A stretch of 64,000 nucleotides of DNA, from positions 168,938 to 232,937 of IMG/VR virus record IMGVR_UViG_3300043411_000942; one strand, written 5' to 3'. The notes beneath the pieces were generated by a model. The model saw nothing but the letters and a program-made list of their open reading frames with translations, made no database searches and was not told the DNA's origin. Both the position numbers and the translations under genes were made by a program. Below are positions 21,453-64,000 of this stretch, piece by piece (position 1 is the stretch's first letter; each line of letters begins with the position of its first letter).

Positions 21453-24400
21453 ATGGCTCAAGATAAGAAACAGGTTGGGATTGCCAACCTCATCCGTAGT
21501 GCTGGGCACAGATCAAAGTCAACAGATAAGAACAGCAAAGCGGGGCTTCTCACGACTACGAAGAGTGGTCGTGAGATTCGCATATTCGACATTCTGACCT
21601 ATATTGAAGCCCCTTGGGGCCTCAATATGACGTTGTACCCAGTACAACGGTTCATAGTCAAGCTCTACTACAACCTACCCCTAGATGAGGTCTTACCTGA
21701 GAACGTGAATCGTCAGATTCGGGTCTCAGACATGTTCAACAGTAAGATACTGTACACCTTCACGGAGAAGGAGTACCTCCATTACCTATACAACGAGGGT
21801 CGCTGCAACATCAAAGAGCAGGACCACATGCGGAGGCAACTTACACTTCCGATAGGTCGGCGCGCGGGCAAGTGCAAGTCTCCGAAATCTTTAGTGGTTA
21901 CGTCAAAAGGCCTTTTAGAGCTTTCTGAACTAGGGGATGTTAGTGGGCCTGAGTGGCAACCCCTTACCATCACTGTCGCACAAGCTGGAGGGCGTCAGGC
22001 ACAATCGTCTCACTTCTACAATAACGGGGTAAGTCAAACCCGTAAGATTAAATTACGCTGTGGCATTGAGGACGAAAGCACTCCCAACCATAGAGTAATG
22101 ATACTAAGTAAAGACGGTGTTGTTGATTGGAAGTGCATGGGGGATGTCCAAGTAGGGGACTATGTAGCGGTCAGTAGAGGTACGGATCTTTGGCCAACTG
22201 TCATGTTCCCCGTACCTAAGGCAAACTTGTGGTCTCTCCCAGATGTAGTTGATGAGGACTTTGGGTTATTTCTAGGGTACTTGGTTGGGGACGGAACCTG
22301 GGGGCAAGCTTCGTACTTAGAGCTTACAGGTTTGGAGGCTCAGGTTCGTAGATTCTCTCAGATTGCATCAAAAGTTTTAGGGCACCCTGGTCGTTGCTAC
22401 CCAGCAATAGGATCTGATAATGGTTGGCGTTGGAGGTTTGACGGGGTGGGCGTAGGGGTTAACGGGCCAGCTAGAGAAGTTAGAGGTGTCTTGCATGACC
22501 TTGGATTTAACCTCGACGTAGAACGAGACAAGAAACGAGTCCCTTTCTCCATTAGAAGGTCCCCTAAGTCTGTTGTTTGTGCGTTTCTTCGTGGGCTATT
22601 TGAGACTGATGGGTGTTCGGAAGACTCTGGTCGAATTATTACACTCTCCTCATCTAGCTTTGAACTTGCCCGTGAAGTCCAACTGCTGTTGTTGAACTTA
22701 GGGGTGATTACGCATATTGGGTCGAAGTGGAACGCTAAGTACAAAAAGCACTACGCCATCCTTTCAATAAGGGGGGCGGAGTCTCGGGCAATTTTCTGCG
22801 AGCAGATCGGGTTTGACTCTGACAGAAAACAAGGACCCCTCCTAGAGAAGGTAGCTCAGCAAAAGGTAAGAGCTGACAACAAGTCAGACACCGAAGCTAT
22901 CCCCAACCAATTTGATTGGTTACAATCCCTACTAGGCCTTATCCCTAAGCGGAATGCTTCTGCTGGCAAACCTGGGTGGGGGCGAAGCCTTCTACGCCAA
23001 GAGTTAGGTAATGCTATCAAACCAGGGTCCTCTGAGGACCTTAGTTACCCCAGATTACGTAAGGCTCTTGTTGTAGCGGGGAACTTAGGCGCTGAGGGTC
23101 CAGTTGTAGACCACTTCGAGGAGTTGCTGCGGCTCAATTACTTTTACGACCCAATTGTCTCGATAGAGGAGGGAGAAGCTCAGGTTTACGACTTGACCGT
23201 GCCAGACGGGGAGGCGTTTGTCGCCAATGGTATGGTCAACCATAACACAACTCTCTCAGCAATTTTCGCTAGTTACGAGTTGTACCGTCTCCTTTCTCTG
23301 CATGATCCGCAGGAGTACTACGGACTCCCGAACGGAAACCGCATACAAATCATTAGCGTTGCTACCGACAAGGACCAAGCAGGGCTGTTGTTCAATGACG
23401 TGACCGCGCACATGGCTAAGTGCGAGTTCTTCAAGCCGTACATTGCCAACAACACGCTATCCTACGTTCAGTTGAGAACCCCTAGTGACATAGAAAAATA
23501 CGGACCAACCAACAGGACGACAGACGGCAAGTTTACGTCCTTCAACGGCAAGGCTTCAATCCGCGTAACCTTCAAAGCTAGTATCTCAAAGGGCCTTCGT
23601 GGAGCTGGTAACGTAGTCATCATCCTAGACGAGATGGCTCACTTCCAGGCTAATGGATCTAGCTCTGCGAAGGACATCTACGACGCAATCACTCCCTCCG
23701 CAGCTGCCTTCTCTCAGAAGGACTTGAACACTGGGTTGCCGATCAATGGTTCAGAGACCGAATCTGAGGCTAGGATCATCGGTATCTCCTCCCCCTTGAA
23801 TAAGGCAGGTAAGTTCTACGAGCTGTTTCACCTTGGCATGAGTCGAGGTGAAGGTTCGGAGAACATGCTTGTCATTCAAGCTCCGACTTGGGAGGTGAAC
23901 CCTACCGTACCTACGAGCTACTATAGGGCAAAGTACCATGAGGACCCTACGGTTTTCATGACAGAGCATGGGGCTCTATTCTCTGACCGTGTACGAGGTT
24001 GGATCGAGCGTGAGCAGGATCTTACGTCCTGTATACGCTCAGACCTACGCCCAAGGTCTTACGGGCCGGTCCGCTACCCGCATCAGATGGGTCTTGACGT
24101 GGGTATGGTAGGGGACGGGACGACTGTAGCCATTACTCACTGCGAGGGTCAAAACGTCATTCTAGACTACCACGAGGCGTGGTACGCAGGAGTGTCGTGG
24201 AAGGAATCGAACCCTCACCTCACTGCCCCTCTAGTAGACTACGCCAAGATGCTAGAGACGGTAGAGCGGTTGGACTTTGATGAGATTGCTAATTGGATCG
24301 TCACGTTATCCAAGAAATTCTACCTGACGTCTGGGATCTTCGATAGGTGGAACGGGCTACCCTTAGAGCAAGCGCTGCACAAAAAGGGGCTCAAGCAATT

Positions 24401-24812
24401 CAAGAGTGAGTTCTTCACCCGAGACGACCGAAGTCGAATGTTTCAGGCCATGAAGCTCATGTTGTTCGATCATCGTATTGTCCTGTACGATTGGCCGATA
24501 ACAGCGGATGGGAAGGCTAAGCACAGCCCCCTGATTGAAGAGCTGTTGAGTCTGCAAGCCACTCAGATGGCTAAGAACCAGATCCTAGTGGAGGCCCCCA
24601 AGATCCTTGGGGCGCACGATGACGTTTCAGATGCGTTGGTACGTGCCGTGTGGCTCTCGTTAGAGCAAGTCTCCAACCAAAAGTCTACGGCTCGACCTGA
24701 GGGAAGTAGTAGCCTCGCTCGTGGGTCGTCATTACAAGGGTACCAAGTACGCAGGGCCCGTAACCATGGGGTGTTGCTAGATCGTAACGTGCGAGGGTTA
24801 CGTCGGCGATAA
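21453..24812 (+). CDS. terL: Terminase large subunit containing an intein (about 661 aa after splicing)
   Basis: LYPVQ, GRRAGK/TT Walker A split by the intein, IILDEMAHF Walker B, ISSP, GLDVG and HDDVSDA nuclease motifs. Confidence 0.92.
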   Translation: MAQDKKQVGIANLIRSAGHRSKSTDKNSKAGLLTTTKSGREIRIFDILTYIEAPWGLNMTLYPVQRFIVKLYYNLPLDEVLPENVNRQIRVSDMFNSKILYTFTEKEYLHYLYNEGRCNIKEQDHMRRQLTLPIGRRAGKCKSPKSLVVTSKGLLELSELGDVSGPEWQPLTITVAQAGGRQAQSSHFYNNGVSQTRKIKLRCGIEDESTPNHRVMILSKDGVVDWKCMGDVQVGDYVAVSRGTDLWPTVMFPVPKANLWSLPDVVDEDFGLFLGYLVGDGTWGQASYLELTGLEAQVRRFSQIASKVLGHPGRCYPAIGSDNGWRWRFDGVGVGVNGPAREVRGVLHDLGFNLDVERDKKRVPFSIRRSPKSVVCAFLRGLFETDGCSEDSGRIITLSSSSFELAREVQLLLLNLGVITHIGSKWNAKYKKHYAILSIRGAESRAIFCEQIGFDSDRKQGPLLEKVAQQKVRADNKSDTEAIPNQFDWLQSLLGLIPKRNASAGKPGWGRSLLRQELGNAIKPGSSEDLSYPRLRKALVVAGNLGAEGPVVDHFEELLRLNYFYDPIVSIEEGEAQVYDLTVPDGEAFVANGMVNHNTTLSAIFASYELYRLLSLHDPQEYYGLPNGNRIQIISVATDKDQAGLLFNDVTAHMAKCEFFKPYIANNTLSYVQLRTPSDIEKYGPTNRTTDGKFTSFNGKASIRVTFKASISKGLRGAGNVVIILDEMAHFQANGSSSAKDIYDAITPSAAAFSQKDLNTGLPINGSETESEARIIGISSPLNKAGKFYELFHLGMSRGEGSENMLVIQAPTWEVNPTVPTSYYRAKYHEDPTVFMTEHGALFSDRVRGWIEREQDLTSCIRSDLRPRSYGPVRYPHQMGLDVGMVGDGTTVAITHCEGQNVILDYHEAWYAGVSWKESNPHLTAPLVDYAKMLETVERLDFDEIANWIVTLSKKFYLTSGIFDRWNGLPLEQALHKKGLKQFKSEFFTRDDRSRMFQAMKLMLFDHRIVLYDWPITADGKAKHSPLIEELLSLQATQMAKNQILVEAPKILGAHDDVSDALVRAVWLSLEQVSNQKSTARPEGSSSLARGSSLQGYQVRRARNHGVLLDRNVRGLRRR
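21873..23246 (+). mobile_element. Contiguous intein (458 aa) with LAGLIDADG homing endonuclease
   Basis: Starts CKSPKSLV, block B TPNHRV, LGYLVGDG and FLRGLFETDG motifs, ends VYDLTV...FVANGMVNHN followed by Thr. Confidence 0.95.
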
Positions 24813-28060: not shown

Positions 28061-28510
28061 ATGAAAACCATAGACAGAATGACAGCTGCTGAGTTGTGCG
28101 TAGAGTCAACTCGACTACGAGGTAGTTTGGTTACCTCCATTGAGCAGTTGCGTGGATTGTACGAGCTTCTCCAACGGAAGGCTAAGTTGGAGCTACGTGA
28201 GGTTGCAACCACTACCAGAAGTAAAACCGCACATGACCCCATGGAGACGGCTAGGGTACATCTTGCGATTGCTTCTGCTGGGCAAAGATTCACGGGTATG
28301 GTGCTGCATGCAACTCGTAGGTTAGGGGCATTCGACCGAACATTGAAACGTGATAAAGTCGCCCAAGATCTACACCCACAAGACCGACCAGCCCCTCAAA
28401 AAGCTAAAGCTGCCCCTAAGAGTGCAGGGAAGGACCCAATCCTTCAACAGGTGTTGTCCTTACCTACTGTAGTTGACGACTTAGATGAGTTGTATGGAGA
28501 TGCTACCTAA
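28061..28510 (+). CDS. Hypothetical protein
   Basis: ORF coupled to the downstream gene by a TAATG overlap. Confidence 0.65.
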   Translation: MKTIDRMTAAELCVESTRLRGSLVTSIEQLRGLYELLQRKAKLELREVATTTRSKTAHDPMETARVHLAIASAGQRFTGMVLHATRRLGAFDRTLKRDKVAQDLHPQDRPAPQKAKAAPKSAGKDPILQQVLSLPTVVDDLDELYGDAT

Positions 28511-30297
28511 TGTCCACGTTCACCAACACTCCTAGCTTTAAGTCCACGACTATAGCCGTTAGTCCGTCTCGTAAGGTATACAGCCCTTACGTATCTCAGA
28601 GCAGTAAGATGTCGAACCTTACCGACAAGGAACGCGCTGCGAGAAAGCTTACGAAGTTAGGTAGTTTCGGGGGAGGTGGAATGAACACCTCGGTATCAAG
28701 TCAATCCCCCTTCTTTAGCGCTCAACTATCGACTGACTTCCTTGAGCTTCCGCAAAACTTACGTGAGAGGCGAGAGCTATTCCGGCACTTCTATGACTCT
28801 GACCCCATTGTAGGTCAGGCCATTGATCTACACACGGATCTTCCCCTCTCCAAGATTCGTCTTGCGAAGCCCACTCCTAGGACCTGTCCAAGTCGATTTA
28901 AGAGTCCAGAGGACTACGCAAACTACATTCTAGCGTTTTTCAATAGGATGGTAAAGCGGGTCAAGCTATTTCAGCGGTTGATTACGGCTACTCACCACTA
29001 CCACCTCGATGGGAATGTCTTCATCTTTGCAGAGGATGGTACCGTAGAGGTTCCAGCTGAGGTGGGGCAGACTACGGTAAAGCAGGCAAGTGCAGTCCTA
29101 GCGGATGACGGCACAACCAAAGAGGTGGTTACCGAAGAATCGGTAGACTATGAGGATAGGGAGGACAGGGAGTTAGCCTACTACCAGCGACACTACAAGG
29201 GTTGGGACAAGATCATCATTCTTCCAATCGATCAGGTTGCGGTTCGATCCATGACATACACGGATAAGGTCAAGTTGAGTCTGATCCCATCCGATAGAGA
29301 TAGGGCCCTTATTACCCAGGCGAGTGCTGGGGATGAGGAGGCTATGGACATGGTGCAGGAGATCCCACCTGAGGTTAGAGATTACATCGAGACTGGCAAA
29401 CTCATCCCCCTGGGTACAGACCCTGACGAAGGTTCGTTTTGCTACCACCTGAAGTCTCGGGCAGGTTCGGGGGAGGAGTTGGGGGCGAGCATCCTAAATC
29501 GTTGCCTACGCGACCTGATGTACAGGGAGAAGCTTCGACAAGCCCAGACTCAAATCGCATCTAGAGCTATGACCCCGAAGCGGCTCGTGTGGGGCGAGAA
29601 CCTTTCTGAGGGGGACACTGAAGACCTTCGAGAGCAAGTAGACCTAGCGCTTGTAGACCCAGACTACTCGATTGTCACCAACTACGAAGTGCATTGGGAG
29701 GAGATAGGGGCGAGAGACCGACTCCTAGACCTATCGGGTGAGTACGAGATTACCGATAAGCACTTGTATGCCGGACTAGGAGTCACAGAAAGTATCCTAA
29801 CTGGCGAAAGCACCTTCTCTGGAGACCGTGTAAAGCTGGAAGTCCTCAACACAAAGTATGTCCTCTTTCGAGAGGTCATTCAAGAGTATGTAGAGGAGAA
29901 CCTATTCAAGCCAGTTGCTAGACGTAAGGGGTTCGTTGAACTTGATGAGTGGGGGGAGGAGGAGGTAGTACTCTTCCCTCGGCTATCCTTTACTCGCCTA
30001 GCTCTACGCGATAGCCAGGACACCTTTGACGCCCTCCTTAATCTGTACCAGAAGGGGAGCTTGTCCATCGATGTCATTCTGGAGCTGTTCAACATTGACC
30101 CAGTAGACACCAAGGAAAAGATTGAGCGTGACATGTTCACGGTCAACGATGCCCTCTTCAATGAGGTTATTCGAGGAATCTACGGTGAGGTTGGTAGGGG
30201 TATTGCAGAGAAGACTGACGTTATGGCAAAGATTGCGGCATACCTCAAGTTGGAAGTAACCCCAGAGGCTCCTGCTGAAGCTGAGGGTAGGTTCTAA
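28510..30297 (+). CDS. Portal protein
   Basis: 595 aa, between TerL and protease/MCP; FY..DPIVGQAIDLH, G.SIL.RCLR, I..GLGV.-type segments typical of portals. Confidence 0.7.
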   Translation: MSTFTNTPSFKSTTIAVSPSRKVYSPYVSQSSKMSNLTDKERAARKLTKLGSFGGGGMNTSVSSQSPFFSAQLSTDFLELPQNLRERRELFRHFYDSDPIVGQAIDLHTDLPLSKIRLAKPTPRTCPSRFKSPEDYANYILAFFNRMVKRVKLFQRLITATHHYHLDGNVFIFAEDGTVEVPAEVGQTTVKQASAVLADDGTTKEVVTEESVDYEDREDRELAYYQRHYKGWDKIIILPIDQVAVRSMTYTDKVKLSLIPSDRDRALITQASAGDEEAMDMVQEIPPEVRDYIETGKLIPLGTDPDEGSFCYHLKSRAGSGEELGASILNRCLRDLMYREKLRQAQTQIASRAMTPKRLVWGENLSEGDTEDLREQVDLALVDPDYSIVTNYEVHWEEIGARDRLLDLSGEYEITDKHLYAGLGVTESILTGESTFSGDRVKLEVLNTKYVLFREVIQEYVEENLFKPVARRKGFVELDEWGEEEVVLFPRLSFTRLALRDSQDTFDALLNLYQKGSLSIDVILELFNIDPVDTKEKIERDMFTVNDALFNEVIRGIYGEVGRGIAEKTDVMAKIAAYLKLEVTPEAPAEAEGRF

Positions 30298-34815: not shown

Positions 34816-36477
34816 ATGGCCTTCCTAAAGTACGCGAATGCGGCTATCCTACAACCAGCTATCAATCAGGAGAGCTGGAGTGAGATCCGTCAGGCTGCCT
34901 TACTAGGCTCTAGCTTTGAGGACCGTACAGCTGCGCATGTAGTACTACAGAAGTATGACCCCGCACAGTACCTGCTCTCGCACTGCTCCATTGTAGCGTC
35001 CGTGGATACGGAGAACTCTGGCCTCCCTACGGGGGCTCAGATGTTTGATGGAGTCCAAATCGAACGGAAGTTCCCAGACCACTACATCACGGTTGAGACT
35101 CAGAAGTACATCAACAACAACCAGGATGCGTTCGAGAGAAAACTGCTACTAGCGACGTACAAGACGTTCATTGGTGCAGAGAACTACATGGAGCACGTCC
35201 AAATCCCCGAGCTGAGTAAGGGGAAGATCATCGATGCAGCGGCTAGAGACATTGGAGACTCTATCTACATTGACATCCTGGTAGCTACTGACCTGAAGCA
35301 CAAGTCCCTGATAGAGGCGATTAGTAGCCAGAAGCTCAGTACCCTATCGATGGGTTGCCAGGTCACCTACACCCAGTGTACGAAGTGTGGCAACATTGCT
35401 GAGGACGAGCTTCAGATTTGCCGTCACATTAAGTACGAAAAGGGTAACTGGTTTATTGATGCCAGCGGTAAGCGTCGTAAGATCGCAGAGCTATGTGGGC
35501 ACCACTCTGACCCTGGGACGGTAAAGTTCATTGAGGGCTCTTGGGTAGGTACTCCAGCATTCACTGGAGCTGTACTAAGGAATATTCTAGACCCAGCTAA
35601 TGCGATGGCGGGAGTGCTTGGTAAGCGGATTCAAGTTGCCTTCTCTCATCCAGCTAGAACGGCAGACCCAGGCTCCCTTCAGAGAGCGGCTAAGTTAGCC
35701 CCTATTGGGGTTGGGGCAAAAGCGGTCAATGCTGACCATATGGTCTATCAGTACGAGGGTCCCTCTATTGGTAAGCTCCACGCGACTACCCCTTACTCAA
35801 AGGACCTGCAAGCCGCTGCTACTTTGGCTGCAAGACAGCAGACCGTTCAGGGTTTTCGCCCAAGTAATTACGGCGTACAGCTGTTCTCCGCAGAACAGCA
35901 AGGGCAGGAGCCTACCCCTCCTGCTCCTGTAGAGGATGTTGACCCCCTTAAGAAGGTTGAAGACGAACTCTACAACACTCTTAAGAAGAAGGTAGAGCGA
36001 CGGGTCCGAGACGACCTCAATAAGGAAGAGTCGTCCAATGTCCGTAAGGTCCTTGACGAGAACTCTTCCAACGAGTCAATCATCAAGTCGGCTCTTCGAT
36101 ACCCTAAGTGGCAACGAAGGGCAAAGACTATCCTAGCCTCGATTCCAGCCTCAAAAGCAAAAGTGATTTTGGCAGGTTGGATCCTCTATGATCGTGGGGG
36201 ATGGGAAGCTGTCGTAGAGGCTAATCGATTTAAGGGACGAGACTTCCTTGCAGTCGCTCACATTGTTGATCGGTCAACAAGAAAGTCTAACTTGTCCGGA
36301 GGTGGTAGAATCTACTCTACAGTTATCGCTGTAGGGGGTATTCGTAAGTATTCAGATGTAAATACCTATTTGGCGGCTTGTCGTCAAGTGCTCGGTCGGA
36401 CCCTCTTAGAAACGGAAAAGGTCCAACTCATCGAGAAGGGTAACTTGTTTTCACTAGGACTCTCGGACTTTGAATAA
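34816..36477 (+). CDS. Prohead maturation protease
   Basis: N.N.D.F, EH, TLSMGC (candidate Ser nucleophile), C..C...C.H insert, FIE.SWV..PAF; between portal and scaffold/MCP. Confidence 0.7.
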   Translation: MAFLKYANAAILQPAINQESWSEIRQAALLGSSFEDRTAAHVVLQKYDPAQYLLSHCSIVASVDTENSGLPTGAQMFDGVQIERKFPDHYITVETQKYINNNQDAFERKLLLATYKTFIGAENYMEHVQIPELSKGKIIDAAARDIGDSIYIDILVATDLKHKSLIEAISSQKLSTLSMGCQVTYTQCTKCGNIAEDELQICRHIKYEKGNWFIDASGKRRKIAELCGHHSDPGTVKFIEGSWVGTPAFTGAVLRNILDPANAMAGVLGKRIQVAFSHPARTADPGSLQRAAKLAPIGVGAKAVNADHMVYQYEGPSIGKLHATTPYSKDLQAAATLAARQQTVQGFRPSNYGVQLFSAEQQGQEPTPPAPVEDVDPLKKVEDELYNTLKKKVERRVRDDLNKEESSNVRKVLDENSSNESIIKSALRYPKWQRRAKTILASIPASKAKVILAGWILYDRGGWEAVVEANRFKGRDFLAVAHIVDRSTRKSNLSGGGRIYSTVIAVGGIRKYSDVNTYLAACRQVLGRTLLETEKVQLIEKGNLFSLGLSDFE

Positions 36478-52549: not shown

Positions 52550-53433
52550 CGGTTCTCCTCCAATTATTGGCAAAGCATGGTATCAGTTTAGATGCCTTCG
52601 TAAAGAAAGGTCGTCCCCCACTGGGAGTTAGGGAGAAGAGGGCTTTAATTGTCACGGAGCTACACCTATCTGGGTACTCTTGGGCCGAGATGTGTCAAAT
52701 CACTGGATTAGGTAATGCTGCTATTCAGAACCTATCTAGAGCAAAGGGGTGCGCTGCGGTAGTTAGAAAACGCAAGGAACTAGGTAGGAATGTTGGGTTG
52801 TCTTGGGCTGGTAATACAAGACCAGGTCAGTTAGAGAAGCAGTGGGCTAGAGGGGATTTCGACCGGCTTAGGGGCCGTATTAGACCAAAAGAAGAGAGAG
52901 CAGCTTTAGTTCGTGGTTGGACTCCAGAGAAACGAGCAGCAGCGTCAGTACGAAGTTTGAAGTTATGGCAAAGTCCAAAAGTTAGGGGTCACCTATTAGG
53001 TTTTCACCGTGACCCACTTGAGCGTAGTAGACGATCGAAGTTGCAAGTTGTGCGCATGCTCCAAACTCCTACAACCTACCTAAGGGGTAAGTTTGATTGG
53101 GTACCTACCCCAAAAGGGATAAGCTCCAAAGCAAGAGTTCGGTCGTCCTATGAAGCTGCGGCAATATCTGTACTTGAGGCTGATGTAACGGTAGCTAAGT
53201 ACAGCTATGAGTTAGTCTTTATGGTTGAAGGTGGTAGGTGGATAATACCCGACTTCCTTGTAGAGTACTCAACTGGAATTACAACTCTAGTTGAGGTAAA
53301 AGCGTCTTGGGTTTTGAGTCTGCCGAGTGATCACAAGGTTAAGCAAAGACTTGAGTTATCCCGTCGACTAGCTGAGCAGAACAACTGGCACTTCGAGATT
53401 TGGACAGAAAAGGAGCTGCGTAATGCTCTCTGA
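52546..53433 (+). CDS. Free-standing TnsA-like PD-(D/E)XK endonuclease between the intein halves
   Basis: Start moved to GTG 52546 (GTGA overlap); N-terminal HTH, basic linker, RSSYE, PDFLVEY, LVEVKA, W.FEIWTEKEL. Confidence 0.8.
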   Translation: MTVLLQLLAKHGISLDAFVKKGRPPLGVREKRALIVTELHLSGYSWAEMCQITGLGNAAIQNLSRAKGCAAVVRKRKELGRNVGLSWAGNTRPGQLEKQWARGDFDRLRGRIRPKEERAALVRGWTPEKRAAASVRSLKLWQSPKVRGHLLGFHRDPLERSRRSKLQVVRMLQTPTTYLRGKFDWVPTPKGISSKARVRSSYEAAAISVLEADVTVAKYSYELVFMVEGGRWIIPDFLVEYSTGITTLVEVKASWVLSLPSDHKVKQRLELSRRLAEQNNWHFEIWTEKELRNAL

Positions 53434-53818
53434 TATACAACGAAGTAGGGTAAGGGCGGCCTTTACTGTAGGAAAGCTCAAGGTCAGATCCGTATCCCCT
53501 AGCGGGAGTATGGAATGGAAACGGGTTGTTGATGTGCAACGAGCTGAAGTCCCATGGGAGACTATCTACGAAGTAAGCTCAGACTTAGGATCAATGGTTT
53601 TGACTAGTGGTCACCGAGTTTTCACTTCTCCTGTAACCAAGACGGAAACTTCGAAACTTTGCCATGGGGTAAGATTACTGTCCGTGGTAGGCAGTTTAGT
53701 TAGTTCCTCAACCGTGGTAAGTGTGCAACAGATTGCTAGCCGACAGTTCATGTACGACTTAACAGCTGAAGATTGGCATAACTTTGTGCTATTTAGGTCT
53801 AAGAGTGTCATTAGCAAC
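53423..53818 (+). mobile_element. Split intein C-fragment (132 aa, no endonuclease domain)
   Basis: Has blocks B, F and G but no block A; terminal Asn followed by Ser. Confidence 0.85.
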
Positions 53819-54319
53819 TCCCCTGACAAGTTTTACAAGTTCCGGCCTCCAGCTCATGAGGAAACGGTCAACCAATTCAGTCGGGTGTTTGGTTATATCT
53901 GGGAGGACGCAGAGTTGCTAGAGTATCTTGAGAGGTCTCTAGACATGATCATTGCGTCCCCTCCTAGGACCCCATTCAATGGCATTGACCAGATGACTCA
54001 GATCCGACCAGAGTGGAGGACGCTCCTCATCACGGGTGGGATGTTCTGGGCACTTCAAGCCCTGCAAATTAACTGGACGGCAGATGAGTTCTCGTACTCG
54101 ATCGGCGGGATCTCCCTAGACTTAGACAAGTCAAGTAAGTATGACACCCTGAAACAAGGTGCAAGCGACCAGTTCGATAAGCAACTTGAGAAGGCCAAAG
54201 CGACCGTCAAGTTCATCAAGGGGCTACAGCAGCCTAAGTACGGGATGGGCGTGCGCAGCGCCTTCGGCCCGTTCCAAAGTAGGGGCGCTATATCTCCGCG
54301 AAAATTCATGGGAATTTAG
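53423..54319 (+). CDS. C-terminal part of the fractured gene: 132-aa IntC + 166-aa C-extein
   Basis: AGGAG RBS; block B LTSGHRVF, block F MYDLTAEDWHNFVL, block G VISN|S; extein SPDKFYKFRPP...DEFSYSIGGISLDLDKSSKY. Confidence 0.88.
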   Translation: MLSDIQRSRVRAAFTVGKLKVRSVSPSGSMEWKRVVDVQRAEVPWETIYEVSSDLGSMVLTSGHRVFTSPVTKTETSKLCHGVRLLSVVGSLVSSSTVVSVQQIASRQFMYDLTAEDWHNFVLFRSKSVISNSPDKFYKFRPPAHEETVNQFSRVFGYIWEDAELLEYLERSLDMIIASPPRTPFNGIDQMTQIRPEWRTLLITGGMFWALQALQINWTADEFSYSIGGISLDLDKSSKYDTLKQGASDQFDKQLEKAKATVKFIKGLQQPKYGMGVRSAFGPFQSRGAISPRKFMGI

Positions 54320-54337: not shown

Positions 54338-54366
54338 TTGACTTTTCCGTTGTGCCGATCCATACT
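54338..54366 (+). promoter_or_regulatory. Sigma70-type promoter, leaderless, for the downstream endonuclease
   Basis: TTGACT-17 nt-CATACT; ATG 54374 follows 7 nt later. Confidence 0.6.
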
Positions 54367-54373
54367 TAGGTCA

Positions 54374-55762
54374 ATGCCAAATAAGGGTCGTTGTGCCTGT
54401 CCTGCGTGTGGGAAGAACCTAGCCCCAAAGAGTATTCACGCTCACACTCTTGAGTGCGTTGATTGGAAGACAAAGTACGGTGACCCGTACCCGTACTTCA
54501 AGTTCAATGGTACCCCACACCAATACTCTGACGTAGCTCAGGAGGGCATTGACTATGTTCGATGTCGAGTGTGTCTTGAGTATGGGTGGGACTTTCGGTT
54601 CAAGCGCATGATGGATCACCTTAAAGGGGTCCACGGTCTTAGTGAGGCTCAGTATCTGCTGAGGTTCCCTGCGGCTCTAGTAAGGTTGCAGTCTACCCTA
54701 AGTAAGAGGCAGGGAACGGTACAGGGTAGGTTTGGAGTTAGTAACGTTTTTCAAGCTGACGTAGTTAAAGCTAAGTCCAAAGCTTCTTTGCTTGAGCGTC
54801 ATGGGGTAACCAGTCCGATTCAAGCTAGTTCGGTACGAGCAAAGATCGATGCTACGAATCTTGCTCGTTACGGGGTGACTAACCCTTTTGCCTCCTCAGA
54901 GGTGAAACAACGCATTCGAGCCACCAACCTAGAGCGATTCGGCGTCGAGAACCCTAACCAAGCTCCTGAAATTATACAACAACGTATAGCTACTAACCAG
55001 GAGCGGTACGGTGCAGATCACTATCTTGAGACTCCCGAGTTCAAAGAGAAGTTCAAGGCAACTTCTTTGGAGAGGTACGGCACTGTGCATCCTATGCAGT
55101 CCCCAGAGGGTAGGTTACCTTGTGAGACTAGTATGCTTGCTAGTCTTGGTGTTACCTACCCATTTCGATCTGATGCTGTACAAAGTAAGGCCTACGCAAC
55201 ATCCGTTGCGAACCATGGGGGGCAGCACCATCTCTCAGACCCAGCAATCATTGAGGCACGGAAGCAGCACCTAATGGAGCTTTACGGAGTTGACAACATC
55301 TCTAAGGTACCAGCGGTTAAAGAGAGGATCATCGCCAAGATTAAGGAGCGGTTTCGAGACGGAGCTATCCCACGAATTACGACTCCAGAGAGGGTATTTA
55401 GAGACCTTGTACCTGAGCGTGTGGTGTATTCTGGGGACTTTGAGTACTGGGTAACGTGGGCAAATGGGAGACGTAAGAATCCTGACTTTGTGGTACTAAC
55501 CGAGGAGCAGTACGCAGCGTATAGGGCTGGGGTCCCTTTGGGAGACCTACGGACCTACCTTGTGGTTGAGGTCAATGGTGTTTGGTGGCATACTAAGCAC
55601 AAGAACATGACGCGCGAGGCTAGGGAGAAAGAGTTTGTAGACGGCTACGCTTCAGTTGGTGTGAGTTGTTTGGTTGTTTGGGAGGACGATCTAGAAACCA
55701 AACCAGAGTCTATTCAGCAGCAGGTCAGCGCGTTTCTTGTGCAACCGAAGGTTAGAGGTTAA
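54374..55762 (+). CDS. Homing-endonuclease-like protein: Zn fingers, (Y/F)GV.NP repeats, Vsr/DUF559-like nuclease
   Basis: CxxC..H...C and CxxC...H...H fingers; repeats such as TNLERFGVENP; C-terminal NPDF, VEVNGVWWH, LVVWEDDL. Confidence 0.8.
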   Translation: MPNKGRCACPACGKNLAPKSIHAHTLECVDWKTKYGDPYPYFKFNGTPHQYSDVAQEGIDYVRCRVCLEYGWDFRFKRMMDHLKGVHGLSEAQYLLRFPAALVRLQSTLSKRQGTVQGRFGVSNVFQADVVKAKSKASLLERHGVTSPIQASSVRAKIDATNLARYGVTNPFASSEVKQRIRATNLERFGVENPNQAPEIIQQRIATNQERYGADHYLETPEFKEKFKATSLERYGTVHPMQSPEGRLPCETSMLASLGVTYPFRSDAVQSKAYATSVANHGGQHHLSDPAIIEARKQHLMELYGVDNISKVPAVKERIIAKIKERFRDGAIPRITTPERVFRDLVPERVVYSGDFEYWVTWANGRRKNPDFVVLTEEQYAAYRAGVPLGDLRTYLVVEVNGVWWHTKHKNMTREAREKEFVDGYASVGVSCLVVWEDDLETKPESIQQQVSAFLVQPKVRG

Positions 55763-58068: not shown

Positions 58069-58122
58069 ACTTTGGACTTCGCTTGGGGTATGTGTGATGG
58101 TAACTTTTCACTAGGAGATGAG

Positions 58123-58461
58123 ATGACTACAGAAGCTACAGTAACTGAAGAAGTTCCGACCCAGAAGAAGGTCCTGACGATTGAGGACCCCATTGACGAG
58201 GAGACCTTGGAGCGATTCAAGACCCTCCAGGGGGTTCGGATGCAGTGTGCGGAGCGACTTTTGGATCTAGAGCAGGAGAAGGTTCGTACCCTCCGTATGG
58301 CAGCTGGAATTGACCAGGACCGCCAGAAGGTGTTTGAGGCTCAGTTGGTAGCTCGCGGGCTTCCACCGAACTTCCCCGTCGAGATCGACGCTACCACTGG
58401 AAAGATTACTCCCGTGATCACTGGGGACGGGCAAGTTGAGGCTGTTGACCAGCCTTCCTGA
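58123..58461 (+). CDS. Hypothetical coiled-coil protein
   Basis: AGGAG RBS before ATG 58123. Confidence 0.7.
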   Translation: MTTEATVTEEVPTQKKVLTIEDPIDEETLERFKTLQGVRMQCAERLLDLEQEKVRTLRMAAGIDQDRQKVFEAQLVARGLPPNFPVEIDATTGKITPVITGDGQVEAVDQPS

Positions 58462-58534: not shown

Positions 58535-59887
58535 ATGGTAGGGCAAAGAGACCGAACCCCTCAGCTACTGGAGATGACAAAGCTCCCGTGGCCAGCACCC
58601 CCACTAAACATCTTCATGTTAGATGGTACGAGAGGAGCTATAGACCTCCGGTGGGATGACCCCGCTATCTTGTCATTGAACAGTGGGTTTCAGCTTCTTG
58701 GGGTGAATGTCTACCGGTCGTTCGACTCTGAGTTTGGACCTTACCATCGGATATCCGACCTACCCATTGGGGCAACCTTTTGGAGAGACCAGACAGACAA
58801 CGAGTTGATTGTAGAGGAGGATGTATCCTCAAGCTTCATCCTATTTGGCGCCTCTCGCTCTGCAAGTGGGTCTGATGCTCCTAGATATGTATTCAAGACC
58901 CTACACTACCCCATCGTTAAATCGGGAAGTGACAGAGGGCAACCTACGAACACTCCTGGGGATGTTCGAGTTTTCGTGGATGGGGTGGAGGCAAGAGTCC
59001 TTCGTGTGAGTGGGGCTACGGGCGAGGTTGAGCTTGACGCCAACATCTACACAGAGGTTGGCCGTCAGAAGACCATAGCTCCTATTCTGCCCACCACGAC
59101 AAGCAGGGTGACGTGTACGTACCTTTACCCAAGGTCTGTACTCAAGACAGACCTGAGTCAGCGTATCTTCTACCGCGTTACCACGGTAGGTATTCCTGTA
59201 AGTTGTAACCCGGCACTCGCTACGGCTCAAGACCTCGTGGAGACCCCACTAGAGCATGCTGCGGCTACGAATACGTTTGAGATAGAGAAGCTTGACTATA
59301 TCTGGAGGGAAGCCATCCGCCGAAATCGGTGGATCCTTCAGCAGGGGGGAGAGAGAGCCAGCGTCTTCCTTCGTAAGAATGTGGGCGTCCCTTGCACATG
59401 TGTGTCCCCTCACCACAAGCAGCCTATCTCCGACTGTTACCTGTGCTACGGGGTTGGAGTTGTTGGGGGCTATGAGGGGCCCTATCCAATCCTGATTGCC
59501 CCAGATGATGCTGAGGTGGCTATTCGGCAAAAAGAGACAGGTCGTGTCCAAGAGCACACCTATGAGGTATGGACAGGCCCCACCCCTCTTCTTAGTCATC
59601 GTGACTTCATCATGAAGGTCAATGGGGACAGGTACTCGATCGGCCCCGTACGGATGCCCTCTAACCGTGGTAACATCCTACAGCAACACTTCTCTATCTC
59701 ATCCTTCGATGACAAGGACATTCGATACAAGGTGCCAGTAGGTAACCCTGTAAAGTACGCTGCTACTCAGTTTGTCCCATCTGGCCCAGAGCATGCAGCA
59801 AGTCAAGAGATTACGAACAACCCCAATGTTGGGGATGAGCGTGAGCTTAAGGGGCGGACTTTGGCTTGGAAGAACCAGAACACGTAA
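58535..59887 (+). CDS. Neck/head-closure-like virion protein with FN3-like N-terminus
   Basis: P.PP.N, LRWD.P, GVNVYRS; C-terminal GE....F.RK..G..C.C......C..C.G.G..GGY. Confidence 0.55.
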   Translation: MVGQRDRTPQLLEMTKLPWPAPPLNIFMLDGTRGAIDLRWDDPAILSLNSGFQLLGVNVYRSFDSEFGPYHRISDLPIGATFWRDQTDNELIVEEDVSSSFILFGASRSASGSDAPRYVFKTLHYPIVKSGSDRGQPTNTPGDVRVFVDGVEARVLRVSGATGEVELDANIYTEVGRQKTIAPILPTTTSRVTCTYLYPRSVLKTDLSQRIFYRVTTVGIPVSCNPALATAQDLVETPLEHAAATNTFEIEKLDYIWREAIRRNRWILQQGGERASVFLRKNVGVPCTCVSPHHKQPISDCYLCYGVGVVGGYEGPYPILIAPDDAEVAIRQKETGRVQEHTYEVWTGPTPLLSHRDFIMKVNGDRYSIGPVRMPSNRGNILQQHFSISSFDDKDIRYKVPVGNPVKYAATQFVPSGPEHAASQEITNNPNVGDERELKGRTLAWKNQNT

Positions 59888-60511: not shown

Positions 60512-61009
60512 TTGTCCAACCTAGCTAAAGTATACGGGAAGCCATTAGTCAAAGGGGTAGCTGCGACTCCTGAGCGGGCACTCAAGTTACTTAAGCAGGA
60601 CATCCTACAGAGGGTCCGAGCCAAGCTACTTCAGTCTACATTCTCGGACAGGGCCAAGAAGGCGTTCTCCAGGTCCTTGTCAGTCAAAATAGGCAGCTCT
60701 TCGCTTACCATCCGGTCCAGCCACCCAGCATTTATCCTCTTGTTGAGAGGTCAACGTAAAGGTCAGATGACCTGGCTCGTGAAGGCTAGGGCTCCTATTC
60801 CTATCATTACGGACACTGGAGAGCTTATTTTCCGTACAGCCTCTGCAAGGTCTATGTTGAATGGTAAGTGGATTCACCCAGGGAGGGGCCCATTCGACTT
60901 TGTGGAGAAAGCTAAAGCAGAAGCCAAGGCTAGGATTCGCAAGGGAATTATGGAAGAGATACGTAGGACTGTAGCTCAGTCCGCCAGACAGAATGGAAGA
61001 ACTAGATGA
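60512..61009 (+). CDS. Basic virion morphogenesis/tail-completion-like protein
   Basis: Arg/Lys-rich; W.HPG....FVEKA motif. Confidence 0.5.
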   Translation: MSNLAKVYGKPLVKGVAATPERALKLLKQDILQRVRAKLLQSTFSDRAKKAFSRSLSVKIGSSSLTIRSSHPAFILLLRGQRKGQMTWLVKARAPIPIITDTGELIFRTASARSMLNGKWIHPGRGPFDFVEKAKAEAKARIRKGIMEEIRRTVAQSARQNGRTR

Positions 61010-61647
61010 ACTTAGGCGATATCGTAGTGTGTGGTGTGACCGAAGACATCCTCTTGGATGACATCAAGTTTATGGTGCCCAAAGGAGAAGCTGTCACAGT
61101 GCCAGCGGACCTTGTTGTCAGGTCGACAGACTTGTACCGGCAACTATCCGTAGGGGCTATATTCCAGTTGAATAAGAACAGCCGTGGGCTCCGACCGAAC
61201 TCCCCACCAAAAGAAGAGCCCCTGGAGAGCCCTTCGCTACAGCCTGTAGTTATGGCAGCTCAGGTAGAGATTGAGGCCCTGAAGTCTGAGAATGCTCGAC
61301 TTGCAGAGGAGAACAACATCCTTCAAGAGAGGGTTTCCGTACTCACCCGAGAGGCTTCTCTACTTAAGGATTCCTTAGGTATTGGGGAGAGGTTAGACCA
61401 GATGATGGTCATGTTGAAGAACGGGGTTGCACAAGGGCCCTCCGTACTTCGCACCTCGAACCTTAACGGCGACTCATTTCCATCCTCGGAAGAGGCTCCA
61501 GTATTCATCCCATCCCAAATCAAAATGGATGATGTTGACACCTCTAGGTTGAGTACCCCTGAATCCACAGAAACTACCTCAGGAGCTGGGGTGTCTAGGG
61601 CTGCAAACGCACTACGTAAGTTGAAGGTAGAGAAGGATAAGTCATGA
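61006..61647 (+). CDS. Hypothetical coiled-coil protein
   Basis: ATGA-coupled ORF. Confidence 0.65.
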   Translation: MNLGDIVVCGVTEDILLDDIKFMVPKGEAVTVPADLVVRSTDLYRQLSVGAIFQLNKNSRGLRPNSPPKEEPLESPSLQPVVMAAQVEIEALKSENARLAEENNILQERVSVLTREASLLKDSLGIGERLDQMMVMLKNGVAQGPSVLRTSNLNGDSFPSSEEAPVFIPSQIKMDDVDTSRLSTPESTETTSGAGVSRAANALRKLKVEKDKS

Positions 61648-62291
61648 CTATTAGAGACCGCATCGCCAAGTTAGTTCAGGTCACGGCAGCAGCTGCTATC
61701 CTTTGGAAGTACGTAGACGAAGACGGCAAGGACTTCTACCTAGCAGAGAAGAAGACTGGCACCGTTCGTAGTCCTTACTCCGGGAAGAGCTTTACTGCGA
61801 AGCCTGAGAGGTCCTCTCTTGGGGATGTAAGCAAGGAGCAAAAGGAAGACGGGTCGAAGACCAAGGGCTCACTCTTCAAGTACACGGATGACGAGGGCAA
61901 CGACTTCTATCTCCCAGAGAAGAAGACCAGCACCCTAAAGAGCCCCTACTCCGGAAAGAGCGTCACCCCTAAGGCGGAGAAGTCTACGTTGAGTGACGTA
62001 GGCAAGGACCTGAAAGAGAAGATTGCAAGCTCACCCATGCAGTGGGAGCTTGCCTCGGACATCCTCGCTAAGAAGGAAGCTCACCCTGCGTTGAAGGTCC
62101 TCCAGGTCCAATACGCGAAGATTCTGGAGGGGTTGGAGGAGGCCGCTCAACGATCAGCTCGAATGAAGAAGGTGGGCGTAGGGGCTACGGAAGACCCAAC
62201 TTTTATCATGGCTCATGTGGTCCCAGAGATTCGTAAGCTTGGGGAGAAGTGTCTGCTTGTTGCTAAGCAGCTAGAGGAGAAGCTCGATTGA
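61644..62291 (+). CDS. Hypothetical protein with internal duplicated domain
   Basis: Two copies of KY.D..G.DFYL.EKKT.T..SPYSGKS.T.K.E.S.L.DV.K. Confidence 0.7.
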   Translation: MTIRDRIAKLVQVTAAAAILWKYVDEDGKDFYLAEKKTGTVRSPYSGKSFTAKPERSSLGDVSKEQKEDGSKTKGSLFKYTDDEGNDFYLPEKKTSTLKSPYSGKSVTPKAEKSTLSDVGKDLKEKIASSPMQWELASDILAKKEAHPALKVLQVQYAKILEGLEEAAQRSARMKKVGVGATEDPTFIMAHVVPEIRKLGEKCLLVAKQLEEKLD

Positions 62292-62968
62292 ACTGGAAAA
62301 CCTCAGCTGACGCTACGCAGGCGATCTGGCAAGACCCATCCTCTTACGACCCCTATACGCAGGGGCCTCCATACCTCCCAGAGAGCCCTTCACGACGTAC
62401 AGCGTCTCAGAAGGTTAGCTCTGAGTTTGGGTTGCCAGAGGCACTAGCGGCCCTTCGCGCCCTAGCTATGGTCCACCAAACGCACCATTGGCTTACTTCA
62501 GGGCCAGCCTTCTACGCAGACCACCTTCTCTTTGAGCGCCTCTACACGGATACGGTTGGTGAGATTGACAGCATCGCTGAGCGAGCTGTGGGAACTGGGG
62601 CTGCCTCTAGTTCCATCCACCCCGTGGTTCAAGCACAGCAAGTTCTGAATGTGCTTGGGACCTGGAACCTCCAAGAAGACCCTAAGTCCTATATCGCTAC
62701 CAGCCTTGTTGCGGAACGATGGGTTCTTGCTCAGTTGAAGCAAGTCGTAGCGACGATGAAGGCCACAGGCGCGCTCTCGCGTGGTACCGATAATCTACTT
62801 GCAAGTATTGAAGATAAGCACGAAGAGCACGTTTACCTTCTTTCTCAACGTAGTAAGGTGGGGCGTTGGAAAGTCCAAAGTACTGAGGCTCGTCGGGCTG
62901 AACTCGAAGTACGTGGTTGGAAGTATGTTGAAAACCCAAAACCTGCGAAGTTTGTGGTAAGGCTTTAG
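62288..62968 (+). CDS. Dps/ferritin-like protein
   Basis: HQTHHW...GP.FYADHLLFERLY.....EID.IAER and EDKHEEH.YLL, a Dps-like iron-binding pattern. Confidence 0.8.
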   Translation: MNWKTSADATQAIWQDPSSYDPYTQGPPYLPESPSRRTASQKVSSEFGLPEALAALRALAMVHQTHHWLTSGPAFYADHLLFERLYTDTVGEIDSIAERAVGTGAASSSIHPVVQAQQVLNVLGTWNLQEDPKSYIATSLVAERWVLAQLKQVVATMKATGALSRGTDNLLASIEDKHEEHVYLLSQRSKVGRWKVQSTEARRAELEVRGWKYVENPKPAKFVVRL

Positions 62969-62994
62969 AGGTAGGGTTAGGAGATTGAAATCAG

Positions 62995-64000
62995 ATGTCA
63001 AACGAAAAAGAGTACGGAGTTGGCGTGGATTTGGGCACAATGAATATTTTGTCCGCTCGGCAGGTTGATGGGAAAGTCACAACCAAACGAGTAAGGGACG
63101 CGTTCATTGACTTGGACGGAGAGGCTAAAAAAGCCCTCAAGATGACGAAGGTGGAGTACATCGAGAGAGACGGTCAGTTGATTGTCATTGGAGACTCAGC
63201 CCTGAACATGGCCAACCTCTTTAAGCGAGAGGTACGTCGACCCCTAGCGAAAGGCGTTGTTGCGGCTGGGGAGTTCTTGGCTCAGGAAGTCTTGTCTTTG
63301 ATGATCTTCCAAGTCTTACAGGAGCCATTGGTCGACGGAGAGCACTGCTTCTACAGTATTCCTGCGGCACCTATTGACATTCCAGACCAGGACGTCACTT
63401 ACCACCGTGAGGTCTTCCGCAAGATCATAGCTGAGTTTGGGTACACCCCCCACCCGATGAACGAAGCTATGGCTATCATCTATAGCCAGTGTGCAGAAGA
63501 GCAGTTCTCGGGGCTATCGGTCAGCTTTGGCTCGGGTATGTGTAACGTGGCACTCGCCTATCAGACCATGATGGGTATGGAGTTCTCTATGGCTAGGGGT
63601 GGGGATTGGATTGATCTCCACGCGTCTAAAGCCACTGGAATGACAGCTTCCCGTATTTGCGCAATCAAAGAAAAAGGAGGTTTCAATCTTGCTAACCCAC
63701 CGAAGAACAGTCGTGAGGCTGAAGCGATATCTCTCTACATTCGTAGCCTCATCAGCTACAGCCTGGAGAAGATCGCACACCAATTCCGTAGGGACGCAGG
63801 CAAGATGGAACTCTCGGACCCAATCCCATTCGTAGTGTCAGGTGGGACCACGAAGGCGGAGGGCTTCATGGATATCTTCAAAGAGGAGTTTGAAGCCATG
63901 AAGAAGAAGGGTTTCCCAATCCAAATCTCCGAGGTTCGACAGGCGAAGGACCCTATGACGGCAGTAGCAGAAGGCCTTCTTGTCCTAGCGATGCAAGAGT
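62995..64000 (+). CDS. Actin-like (MreB/MamK/FtsA-type ASKHA) ATPase, runs off the window end; not in ORF track
   Basis: Hand translation: MSNEKEYGVGVDLGTMN, SIPA, NEAMA, SFGSGMCN, RGGDWID, IKE, VVSGGTT, AVAEGL; AGGAG upstream. Confidence 0.88.
   Translation, partial: MSNEKEYGVGVDLGTMNILSARQVDGKVTTKRVRDAFIDLDGEAKKALKMTKVEYIERDGQLIVIGDSALNMANLFKREVRRPLAKGVVAAGEFLAQEVLSLMIFQVLQEPLVDGEHCFYSIPAAPIDIPDQDVTYHREVFRKIIAEFGYTPHPMNEAMAIIYSQCAEEQFSGLSVSFGSGMCNVALAYQTMMGMEFSMARGGDWIDLHASKATGMTASRICAIKEKGGFNLANPPKNSREAEAISLYIRSLISYSLEKIAHQFRRDAGKMELSDPIPFVVSGGTTKAEGFMDIFKEEFEAMKKKGFPIQISEVRQAKDPMTAVAEGLLVLAMQE

What the first reader, a model, noticed from the sequence alone, without database searches (positions are those of the whole stretch)
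62995..64000. Phage-encoded actin-like ATPase missed by the ORF track
Seen: an uninterrupted 335-codon frame from ATG 62995 to the window end with all ASKHA actin-fold motifs (DLGT, NEA, FGSG, GGD, SGG, A.G). Known: jumbo phages usually position DNA with tubulin PhuZ; phage actins such as AlpC are much less studied. Inference: a cytoskeletal element for DNA or capsid positioning or host-shape control, encoded next to virion genes. The coiled-coil genes upstream are possible adaptors.
Basis: partly seen in the sequence, partly recalled or inferred. Interest (0 to 1): 0.62.

Follow-up and report, generated by a model that had tools for sequence, protein, structure and literature searches.

The report
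Volactin-type actin gene in huge phages
The frame is real: it encodes an actin-like protein of the "volactin" family. It is a strictly conserved, single-copy gene of a group of uncultured giant phages and sits among their neck and tail genes, so these viruses probably carry their own actin cytoskeleton, whose cargo is unknown.

Summary
Confirmed. ATG 62995 opens a 335-codon frame that runs off the end of a 232,937-bp IMG/VR phage contig. A 97%-identical relative shows the full gene is 338 aa.

**Identity.** Its only Pfam match is Volactin (PF25216, 238.7 bits, full length). The AF2 model (pLDDT 94.8) is a four-subdomain actin fold. The nearest solved relatives are all filament formers: MamK, BeeR, MreB, FtsA, crenactin.

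**Conservation.**
- 77 of 77 informative loci, fetched through the neighbouring tail-terminator gene, carry it immediately upstream.
- It is the most conserved gene of its block, and dN/dS is 0.087.
- Some copies carry inteins in the ATP-binding loop.
- The phage copies form one clade, separate from the Planctomycetota members (80 of 201 genomes sampled) and the haloarchaeal members.

**Context.**
- No tubulin was found in the 380-kb relative that has terminal repeats.
- There is no ParR/parC-like partner.

**Interpretation.** The best reading is an ATP-dependent filament protein co-expressed with late virion genes, which organises assembly or positioning. Polymerisation and cargo are inferred, not shown. 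The host is unknown. I found no paper describing it. It is a new phage branch of a known actin family, of moderately high interest.

The parts
62995..64000 (+). Volactin-family actin homologue, 335 of about 338 codons; the 3' end is cut by the contig end
   Evidence: Open frame. PF25216 at 238.7 bits, model positions 3-321 of 321. The full-length relative L003:9977-10993 is 338 aa. AF2 model pLDDT 94.8.
62979..62983 (+). Shine-Dalgarno AGGAG, 11 nt upstream of ATG 62995
   Evidence: Read directly from the sequence. No promoter-like or terminator-like site above chance lies between this gene and the upstream genes.
62288..62968 (+). Ferritin/Dps-like protein (family F1), the immediate upstream neighbour
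   Evidence: PF00210 at 33.2 bits against a cut-off of 24.5. phrog_3636 'DNA binding protein', E 1.3e-12. Syntenic in 26 loci.
61644..62291 (+). Second F1 paralogue, function unknown
   Evidence: Clusters with 62288-62968 by BLASTP and keeps its place in related phages.
61006..61647 (+). Coiled-coil protein (family F4); keeps its place but diverges fast
   Evidence: Weak ZapB match, E 0.003, below the cut-off. Median pairwise identity 32%.
60512..61009 (+). Conserved 165-aa protein (family F8), function unknown
   Evidence: Synteny in 19 loci. No Pfam or PHROG match.
58535..59887 (+). Conserved 450-aa protein (family F3) with an invariant four-cysteine CPC...C..C motif, function unknown
   Evidence: Alignment A4. 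Synteny in 25 loci. Atlas look-alikes are 97-100% viral. No PDB match by profile.
58072..58461 (+). Conserved 129-aa protein (family F9), first gene of the syntenic block
   Evidence: Synteny in 18 loci. No Pfam match.
28510..30297 (+). Portal protein (context: virion module on the same strand)
   Evidence: phrog_16240, E 7e-24.
34816..36477 (+). Head maturation protease-like protein (context)
   Evidence: phrog_18299, E 9e-11.
21453..24812 (+). 1119-aa protein with a terminase-large-subunit-like C-terminal half (context)
   Evidence: phrog_17415, E 9e-29. tblastn hits to phage terminases and helicases.

Best explanation
The frame encodes a volactin-family (Pfam PF25216) actin homologue. It is a single-copy core gene of a clade of uncultured huge phages whose longest contigs reach about 380-530 kb. 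It lies in a conserved block on the virion-gene strand, F9-F3-F8-F4-F1-F1-ACTIN. In relatives the block continues with a tail-terminator gene, a zinc-ribbon protein and a 1,430-aa protein.

Shown:
- The actin fold, with all five nucleotide-binding and connecting motifs.
- Family membership.
- Strict conservation and fixed position.
- Strong purifying selection.
- Closest solved relatives that are all filament formers.

Inferred:
- The protein binds and hydrolyses ATP and polymerises into dynamic filaments, as its characterised relative volactin does in Haloferax volcanii.
- It is co-transcribed with its upstream neighbours, and probably expressed with the late neck and tail genes.
- It organises a late step of infection in the host cell, such as placing or transporting capsids, tails or DNA during assembly of very large virions. 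In that role it would fill the place that the PhuZ tubulin fills in nucleus-forming jumbo phages.

The cargo and any adaptor are unknown.
For: Identity:
- PF25216 is the only Pfam match, E 1.5e-70 and full length.
- 38% identity, E 1e-81, to a Haloarcula family member.
- AF2 pLDDT 94.8, pTM 0.92.
- VIA-align: BeeR Z 26.2, crenactin 24.9, MreB 24.3. Foldseek top hits are MreB, MamK and BeeR.
- Profile against PDB: MamK 6e-15, BeeR 2e-8, MreB 2e-6, FtsA 4e-6, with no Hsp70 or sugar kinase.
- Invariant D14, G16, T17, E160, G182, G184, D207, D210, G286, G287 across 40 diverse members.

Core gene:
- 37 IMG/VR loci were found with the protein, on contigs up to 529 kb.
- 77 of 77 informative loci fetched through the tail terminator carry it just upstream.
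- It is the most conserved gene in the block, median 68.6% identity against 60-63% for the structural neighbours.
- dN/dS is 0.087.
- Some copies carry inteins in the phosphate-2 loop, as is typical of conserved essential sites.

Context:
- The downstream gene has a tail-terminator fold: Z 14.1 to the Pa193 gateway protein, 13.9 to the phage 812 neck, 10.3 to lambda gpU, and Foldseek E 7e-8.
- A terminase-like gene, portal and protease lie upstream on the same strand.
- There is a 26-nt gap with an SD sequence and no terminator before the gene.
- No tubulin or FtsZ was found in the 380-kb relative with terminal repeats.
- Volactin forms dynamic filaments in vivo (PMC10869688).
Against: - No experiment or reads data bears on expression or polymerisation.
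- Hsp70 nucleotide-binding domains score almost as high by fold (BiP Z 23.4), so fold alone does not prove filament formation.
- The first Asp of the phosphate-2 motif is Ser in this family. This also holds for the cellular members, so it is a family trait.
- Position among tail genes is not where known phage cytoskeletal genes sit.
- The record is only 49% complete by CheckV and the relative 79%, so absence of tubulin is 'not found', not 'absent'.
- The host is unknown.
Confidence: 0.6

Rival explanations
1. It is a non-polymerising ASKHA ATPase that acts as an assembly chaperone for neck or tail proteins, like an Hsp70 nucleotide-binding domain working with phage partners. That would explain its fixed place beside the tail terminator.
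For: It is fixed directly upstream of the tail terminator in 77 of 77 loci. Hsp70-type domains are near the top of the fold list: BiP Z 23.4, Ssb1 21.5. EutJ appears weakly in the profile search.
Against: There is no substrate-binding domain; at 338 aa it is the ATPase core only. No Hsp70 Pfam match appears at E <= 1. The significant sequence-profile neighbours are MamK, BeeR, MreB and FtsA. The one characterised family member polymerises.
Confidence: 0.15
2. It remodels the host cell rather than organising phage parts. It would take over or replace a host volactin, MreB or FtsA-type system to change shape, block division or enlarge the cell for a large burst.
For: Volactin controls cell shape in Haloferax. 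The family is common in Planctomycetota, 80 of 201 genomes sampled, a phylum that could include hosts. hhalign relates the profile to FtsA and MreB.
Against: The phage clade is separate from both cellular clades, at 36-41% identity, so this is not a recent host-gene capture. No membrane-targeting helix is evident at either end of the sequence. The host is unknown. Late-module placement fits assembly better than early takeover.
Confidence: 0.15
3. It is a ParM/AlpC-like DNA-segregation motor that moves or partitions phage genomes with a DNA-binding adaptor, for example the upstream Dps-like protein.
For: Known phage and plasmid actins (ParM, Alp7A, AlpC) work this way; that is established knowledge. 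The immediate upstream gene is ferritin/Dps-like and matches a PHROG named 'DNA binding protein'.
Against: No iterated centromere-like repeats lie near the gene in the window or in L003. No ParM Pfam match was found. The downstream gene is a tail terminator, not a ParR-like adaptor. The gene sits in the virion module of a phage with terminal repeats, not near replication genes.
Confidence: 0.1

Closest known systems
Volactin (VolA, HVO_2015) of Haloferax volcanii; Pfam PF25216
   Same: Same Pfam family at full length, 238.7 bits against a cut-off of 35. 38% identity to haloarchaeal members. Similar size, about 340 aa, with no extra domains.
   Different: Encoded by a bacteriophage-type genome with a non-acidic protein. 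It forms its own clade away from the haloarchaeal sequences. It is embedded in neck and tail genes rather than a cellular locus. Filament dynamics and a shape role are shown only for the archaeal protein. The H. volcanii sequence itself could not be fetched here.
MamK, BeeR, MreB and FtsA (bacterial filament-forming actins)
   Same: Nearest solved structures by profile and by fold. They share the phosphate-1, connect-1, phosphate-2, adenosine and connect-2 motifs.
   Different: Only 12-19% identity. No match to the MreB_Mbl Pfam model at E <= 1. No obvious membrane-binding helix. The phosphate-2 motif begins with Ser instead of Asp.
AlpC/AlpA of Corynebacterium prophage CGP3, and ParM/ParR/parC
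   Same: An actin-fold ATPase carried by a mobile element or phage.
   Different: A different actin family. No adaptor gene or centromere repeats were found. It sits in the structural module. It is a core gene of lytic-looking huge phages with terminal repeats.
PhuZ tubulin spindle of nucleus-forming jumbo phages
   Same: A phage-encoded cytoskeletal polymer in very large phages. This is the role that the protein here may parallel.
   Different: A different fold (tubulin against actin). No tubulin or FtsZ match was found in the 380-kb relative. No evidence here for a phage nucleus.

Membership tests
Pfam PF25216 Volactin | Full-length match to the family HMM above the gathering score | tested here: met
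   238.7 bits against 35, E 1.5e-70, model positions 3-321 of 321. The same result came from the genome search.
Pfam PF25216 Volactin | Direct full-length similarity to haloarchaeal members | tested here: met
   38% identity over 328 residues, E 1e-81, to the Haloarcula marismortui pNG700 protein. In the tree the phage clade lies apart from the haloarchaeal clade.
Pfam PF25216 Volactin | Dynamic polymerisation into filaments in vivo, as shown for VolA | not testable with these tools
   Known only for H. volcanii (PMC10869688). The self-association prediction gave no verdict.
Actin/ASKHA superfamily, filament-forming branch | Four-subdomain actin fold with five conserved nucleotide-binding and connecting motifs | tested here: met
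   AF2 pLDDT 94.8. 287-311 residues align to MreB, BeeR and crenactin at Z 24-26. Motifs are invariant across 40 members. The phosphate-2 motif reads SFGSGM, with Ser where most actins have Asp.
ParMRC / AlpAC-type segregation system | Actin gene paired with a DNA-binding adaptor gene and iterated centromere repeats | tested here: not met
   The downstream gene is a tail terminator. Only trivial two-copy repeats were found. No ParM Pfam match. The upstream Dps-like gene is an untested candidate adaptor.
MreB | Match to PF06723 and a membrane-binding element | tested here: not met
   No PF06723 match at E <= 1. NCBIfam MreBH scored 12 bits against a cut-off of 515. hhalign shows only remote homology, probability 91.7%.
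Hsp70-type chaperone | ATPase domain joined to a substrate-binding domain; match to the HSP70 model | tested here: not met
   The protein is 338 aa, the ATPase core only. No HSP70 Pfam match. No Hsp70 chain in the profile search of PDB. Fold similarity alone is high, Z 23.4.
PhuZ / tubulin | Tubulin/FtsZ GTPase fold | tested here: not met
   The protein has an actin fold. No PF00091 or PF12327 match in G202 or G000.

The most novel reading that the evidence does not exclude
These huge phages run an actin-based assembly or transport system as part of their core late programme. It would be an actin counterpart of the PhuZ spindle, tied to neck and tail assembly or capsid positioning, possibly with the protein also packaged in the virion. 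It would be an independent recruitment of a cytoskeletal polymer by phages. The volactin family shared by phages, Planctomycetota and haloarchaea may owe part of its patchy spread to such viruses.
Probability: 0.25. Interest if true: 0.8.

Novelty: new member of a known kind. Interest (0 to 1): 0.6.

Why it matters
Phage-encoded cytoskeletons are known mainly from the PhuZ tubulin of nucleus-forming jumbo phages and a few ParM/AlpC-type actins. Here an actin of a different family, one so far characterised only in a haloarchaeon, turns out to be a fixed, highly conserved gene of a whole clade of uncultured giant phages.

It is more conserved than the neighbouring structural genes, it sits inside the neck and tail module, and some copies carry inteins in the ATP-binding loop.

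That gives a concrete, expressible candidate for asking how very large phages organise assembly inside the cell. It also shows that the volactin family reaches well beyond archaea, into phages and about 40% of sampled Planctomycetota genomes. I found no paper describing either point in the library searched.

Tried and rejected
- **Self-association.** The prediction with two copies and alignment A1 scored 0.00 and gave 'no answer'. It is not evidence either way.
- **PHROGs.** No family matched the actin.
- **Single-sequence PDB search.** Only FtsA appeared, at E 0.75. The profile search was needed.
- **Pattern scans of species genomes.** With the phage protein alone, no close relative turned up in about 185,000 species genomes. 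So there are no mis-binned contigs to hint at a host.
- **Relatives of a virus record.** These cannot be drawn.
- **Supplement search.** Looking for LR745208 and LR756511 in the huge-phage paper found nothing.
- **Short contigs.** The contigs for P0124, P0130 and P0136 gave little or no context.
- **Profiles of neighbours.** F2, F3 and the 1,430-aa protein found nothing significant in PDB by sequence. F2 was settled by fold instead. The 1,430-aa protein as a tail sheath remains a guess from gene order and was dropped as a claim.
- **Distant homologues.** The 402-aa protein downstream of a distant homologue (L042) is not detectably related to F2.
- **Terminase search.** No close cultured phage was found. 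The best named hits are 25-27% identical.
- **Host.** Not determined. Planctomycetota is only a thought prompted by the family's distribution.

Full report
**Observation.** window:62995-64000:+ reads as 335 codons without a stop. It is listed only when frames open at the sequence end are allowed. The window is the last 64 kb of an IMG/VR virus record of 232,937 bp, 49% complete by CheckV, so the gene is cut by the contig end. In the 97%-identical copy on L003 (a 379,936-bp contig) the gene is 338 aa. An AGGAG lies 11 nt before the ATG, and only 26 nt separate the gene from the upstream one.

**What the element is.** The record has 51.7% G+C, about 386 ORFs and 46 tRNA genes. On the same strand upstream lie a clamp loader, a terminase-like protein, a portal and a head protease. 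IMG/VR classes the close relative G202 as having direct terminal repeats. The only hits in the GenBank phage collection are two uncultured huge phages, LR745208 (485 kb, 53%) and LR756511 (595 kb, 31%). The best named phages found with the terminase-like protein are 25-27% identical. This is an uncultured huge phage with no close isolate.

**What the protein is.** Pfam gives one match, PF25216 Volactin, at 238.7 bits over the whole model. Nothing else appears at E <= 1, not MreB, FtsA, ParM, actin or Hsp70. PHROGs has no family for it.

The AF2 model built on 40 homologues is confident, with pLDDT 94.8 and pTM 0.92.
- Foldseek puts MreB, MamK and BeeR first.
- VIA-align gives BeeR Z 26.2 (305 residues, rmsd 3.5), crenactin 24.9, MreB 24.3, BiP 23.4, FtsA 22.4, actin 22.4 and ParM 21.9.

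Fold scores do not separate filament formers from Hsp70 domains, so I ran the family profile against PDB sequences. It found MamK at 6e-15, BeeR 2e-8, MreB 2e-6 and FtsA 4e-6, with no Hsp70 or sugar kinase. hhalign against E. coli MreB and FtsA gives 92-93% probability.

Eighteen columns are invariant across 40 members that are 31-80% identical to the phage protein. They include the phosphate-1 DxGT, the connect-1 Glu, GxG of phosphate-2, GGDWID and the adenosine GG. In this family the phosphate-2 motif starts with Ser rather than Asp. This also holds in the cellular members.

**How conserved it is.**
- A protein search found 1,515 relatives. The top 120 are 67-97% identical, and many lie on contigs of 200-570 kb.
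- Thirty-seven IMG/VR loci carry it.
- Their gene order is fixed: F9, F3 (450 aa, four invariant Cys), F8, F4 (coiled coil), one or two F1 (one ferritin/Dps-like), the actin, F2 (about 396 aa), F7 (zinc ribbon), F5 (about 1,430 aa).
- LR745208 keeps this order at 53-57% actin identity.
- As an independent test I fetched 80 loci through F2 alone. Seventy-seven have the actin just upstream, and the other three hold less than 1.1 kb of upstream sequence.
- The actin is the most conserved gene of the block, at median 68.6% pairwise identity. F2, F3 and F5 are at 60-63% and the coiled-coil protein at 32%.
- dN/dS between the window and L003 is 0.087 at dS 0.22.
- G202 has one copy.

**Neighbours.** F2 folds (pLDDT 73.6) as a tail-terminator or gateway protein with an inserted domain. 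VIA-align gives Pa193 Z 14.1, phage 812 neck 13.9, T5 p142 12.3, lambda gpU 10.3 and T4 gp15 9.0. Foldseek gives 8qkh_G at E 7e-8. The Atlas feature search had pointed the same way.

So the actin lies inside the neck and tail part of the virion module. In L002 and L003 an endonuclease VII/HNH gene with a helix-turn-helix domain sits between the actin and F2. The window's contig ends exactly there.

No promoter-like or terminator-like signal above chance separates the actin from its upstream genes. No centromere-like repeat arrays were found. No tubulin or FtsZ match was found in G202 or G000.

**Family distribution.**
- Of 14 control genomes, only H. volcanii passes the Pfam cut-off.
- Haloarchaeal megaplasmids carry members 37-38% identical to the phage protein, annotated 'FtsA' or hypothetical.
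- An acidic representative led to a bacterial MAG with two tandem paralogues. In that genome's phylum, 80 of 201 sampled genomes pass the cut-off. Record titles identify the phylum as Planctomycetota. Those proteins are 35-41% identical to the phage one.
- In a 150-row tree the 30 IMG/VR phage sequences form one clade (SH-aLRT 100). It is separate from the Planctomycetota clade (98) and the haloarchaeal clade (100). Deeper order is unresolved, and many unlabelled metagenomic representatives lie between them. This was a quick LG+G4 tree. I left out representatives outside 300-420 aa, which include the intein-bearing and fused forms.

**Inteins.** Several homologues of about 700 aa are split by inteins with LAGLIDADG or HNH domains. 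These lie at two sites in or just after the phosphate-2 loop. They have the usual Cys start and His-Asn end, followed by Cys or Ser. Two that I looked up sit in the same phage gene order. Inteins favour conserved functional sites of important proteins, which fits a working ATPase.

**Interpretation.** Family membership, fold, motif conservation and the nearest relatives all point to a filament-forming actin. The one studied member forms dynamic, tip-anchored filaments (PMC10869688). Fixed placement in the late structural block, close spacing with its upstream neighbour, and the lack of a tubulin suggest a filament system that acts during virion assembly or intracellular positioning. Polymerisation, timing and cargo are inference.

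The rivals are an assembly chaperone, a host-shape or division effector, and a ParM-like DNA mover using the upstream Dps-like protein. The evidence for and against each is set out under rival explanations.

**Literature.** Seventeen papers mention volactin, and none of the 14 listed deals with phages or Planctomycetota. Searches for actin-like proteins in huge, jumbo or mega phages found only reviews and unrelated work. The huge-phage survey mentions tubulin but not actin. The actin discussed for predatory planctomycetes is a lokiactin relative, which is a different protein. BeeR is a separate bacterial actin family.

**Limits.**
- The self-association job gave no verdict.
- The H. volcanii sequence itself was not available.

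Noticed in passing
P0123, P0126, P0127, P0133, P0134, P0155, P0164, P0167; loci L225:7001-9130 and L226:1468-3522: Phage volactin homologues of about 700 aa carry inteins (Cys start, His-Asn end, LAGLIDADG or HNH domain). The inteins lie at two different sites in or just after the phosphate-2 ATP-binding loop. Two that were looked up sit in the same gene order as the window.
   Followed up: yes
Genomes G001-G201; loci L045-L137: PF25216 passes its cut-off in 80 of 201 sampled Planctomycetota genomes. Some have tandem paralogues, and some lie in open frames of 600-1,150 aa with N-terminal extensions. I found no paper on this.
   Followed up: partly
L144:3992-5179, L145:3992-5020, L146:3992-5026: Haloarchaeal members of the family lie on megaplasmids of Halogeometricum, Haloarcula and Natrinema. 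They are annotated 'cell division protein FtsA' or hypothetical.
   Followed up: partly
L003:11001-11819 (also L002); window end at 64000: An endonuclease VII/HNH gene with a helix-turn-helix domain sits between the actin and the tail terminator in the closest relatives. The window's contig breaks exactly at this point, perhaps because strains differ in carrying this mobile gene.
   Followed up: partly
P0129 (729 aa): A protein with two complete volactin domains in tandem, 378.6 bits in two stretches.
   Followed up: no
G000:C1:72353-152259 (upstream of the window): 46 tRNA genes, most of them clustered in about 25 kb of the phage record.
   Followed up: no
window 21453-24812: The 1119-aa ORF pairs a helicase-like N-terminal half with a terminase-large-subunit-like C-terminal half. 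Different phages hit different halves.
   Followed up: partly
window 52531-54319: Two adjacent ORFs with marks of mobile elements: a TnsA-like endonuclease domain (52531-53433) and a weak intein-splicing match (53423-54319).
   Followed up: no
L003:13536-13973 and its family F7; L139:2968-3438; L226:4829-5257: A small FmdB-type zinc-ribbon protein (PF09723, just under the cut-off in L003) is conserved between the tail terminator and the 1,430-aa protein.
   Followed up: partly
window 54338-55762: A 474-aa protein with three DUF7487 stretches (142 bits) lies just upstream of the syntenic block. It recurs in L225.
   Followed up: no
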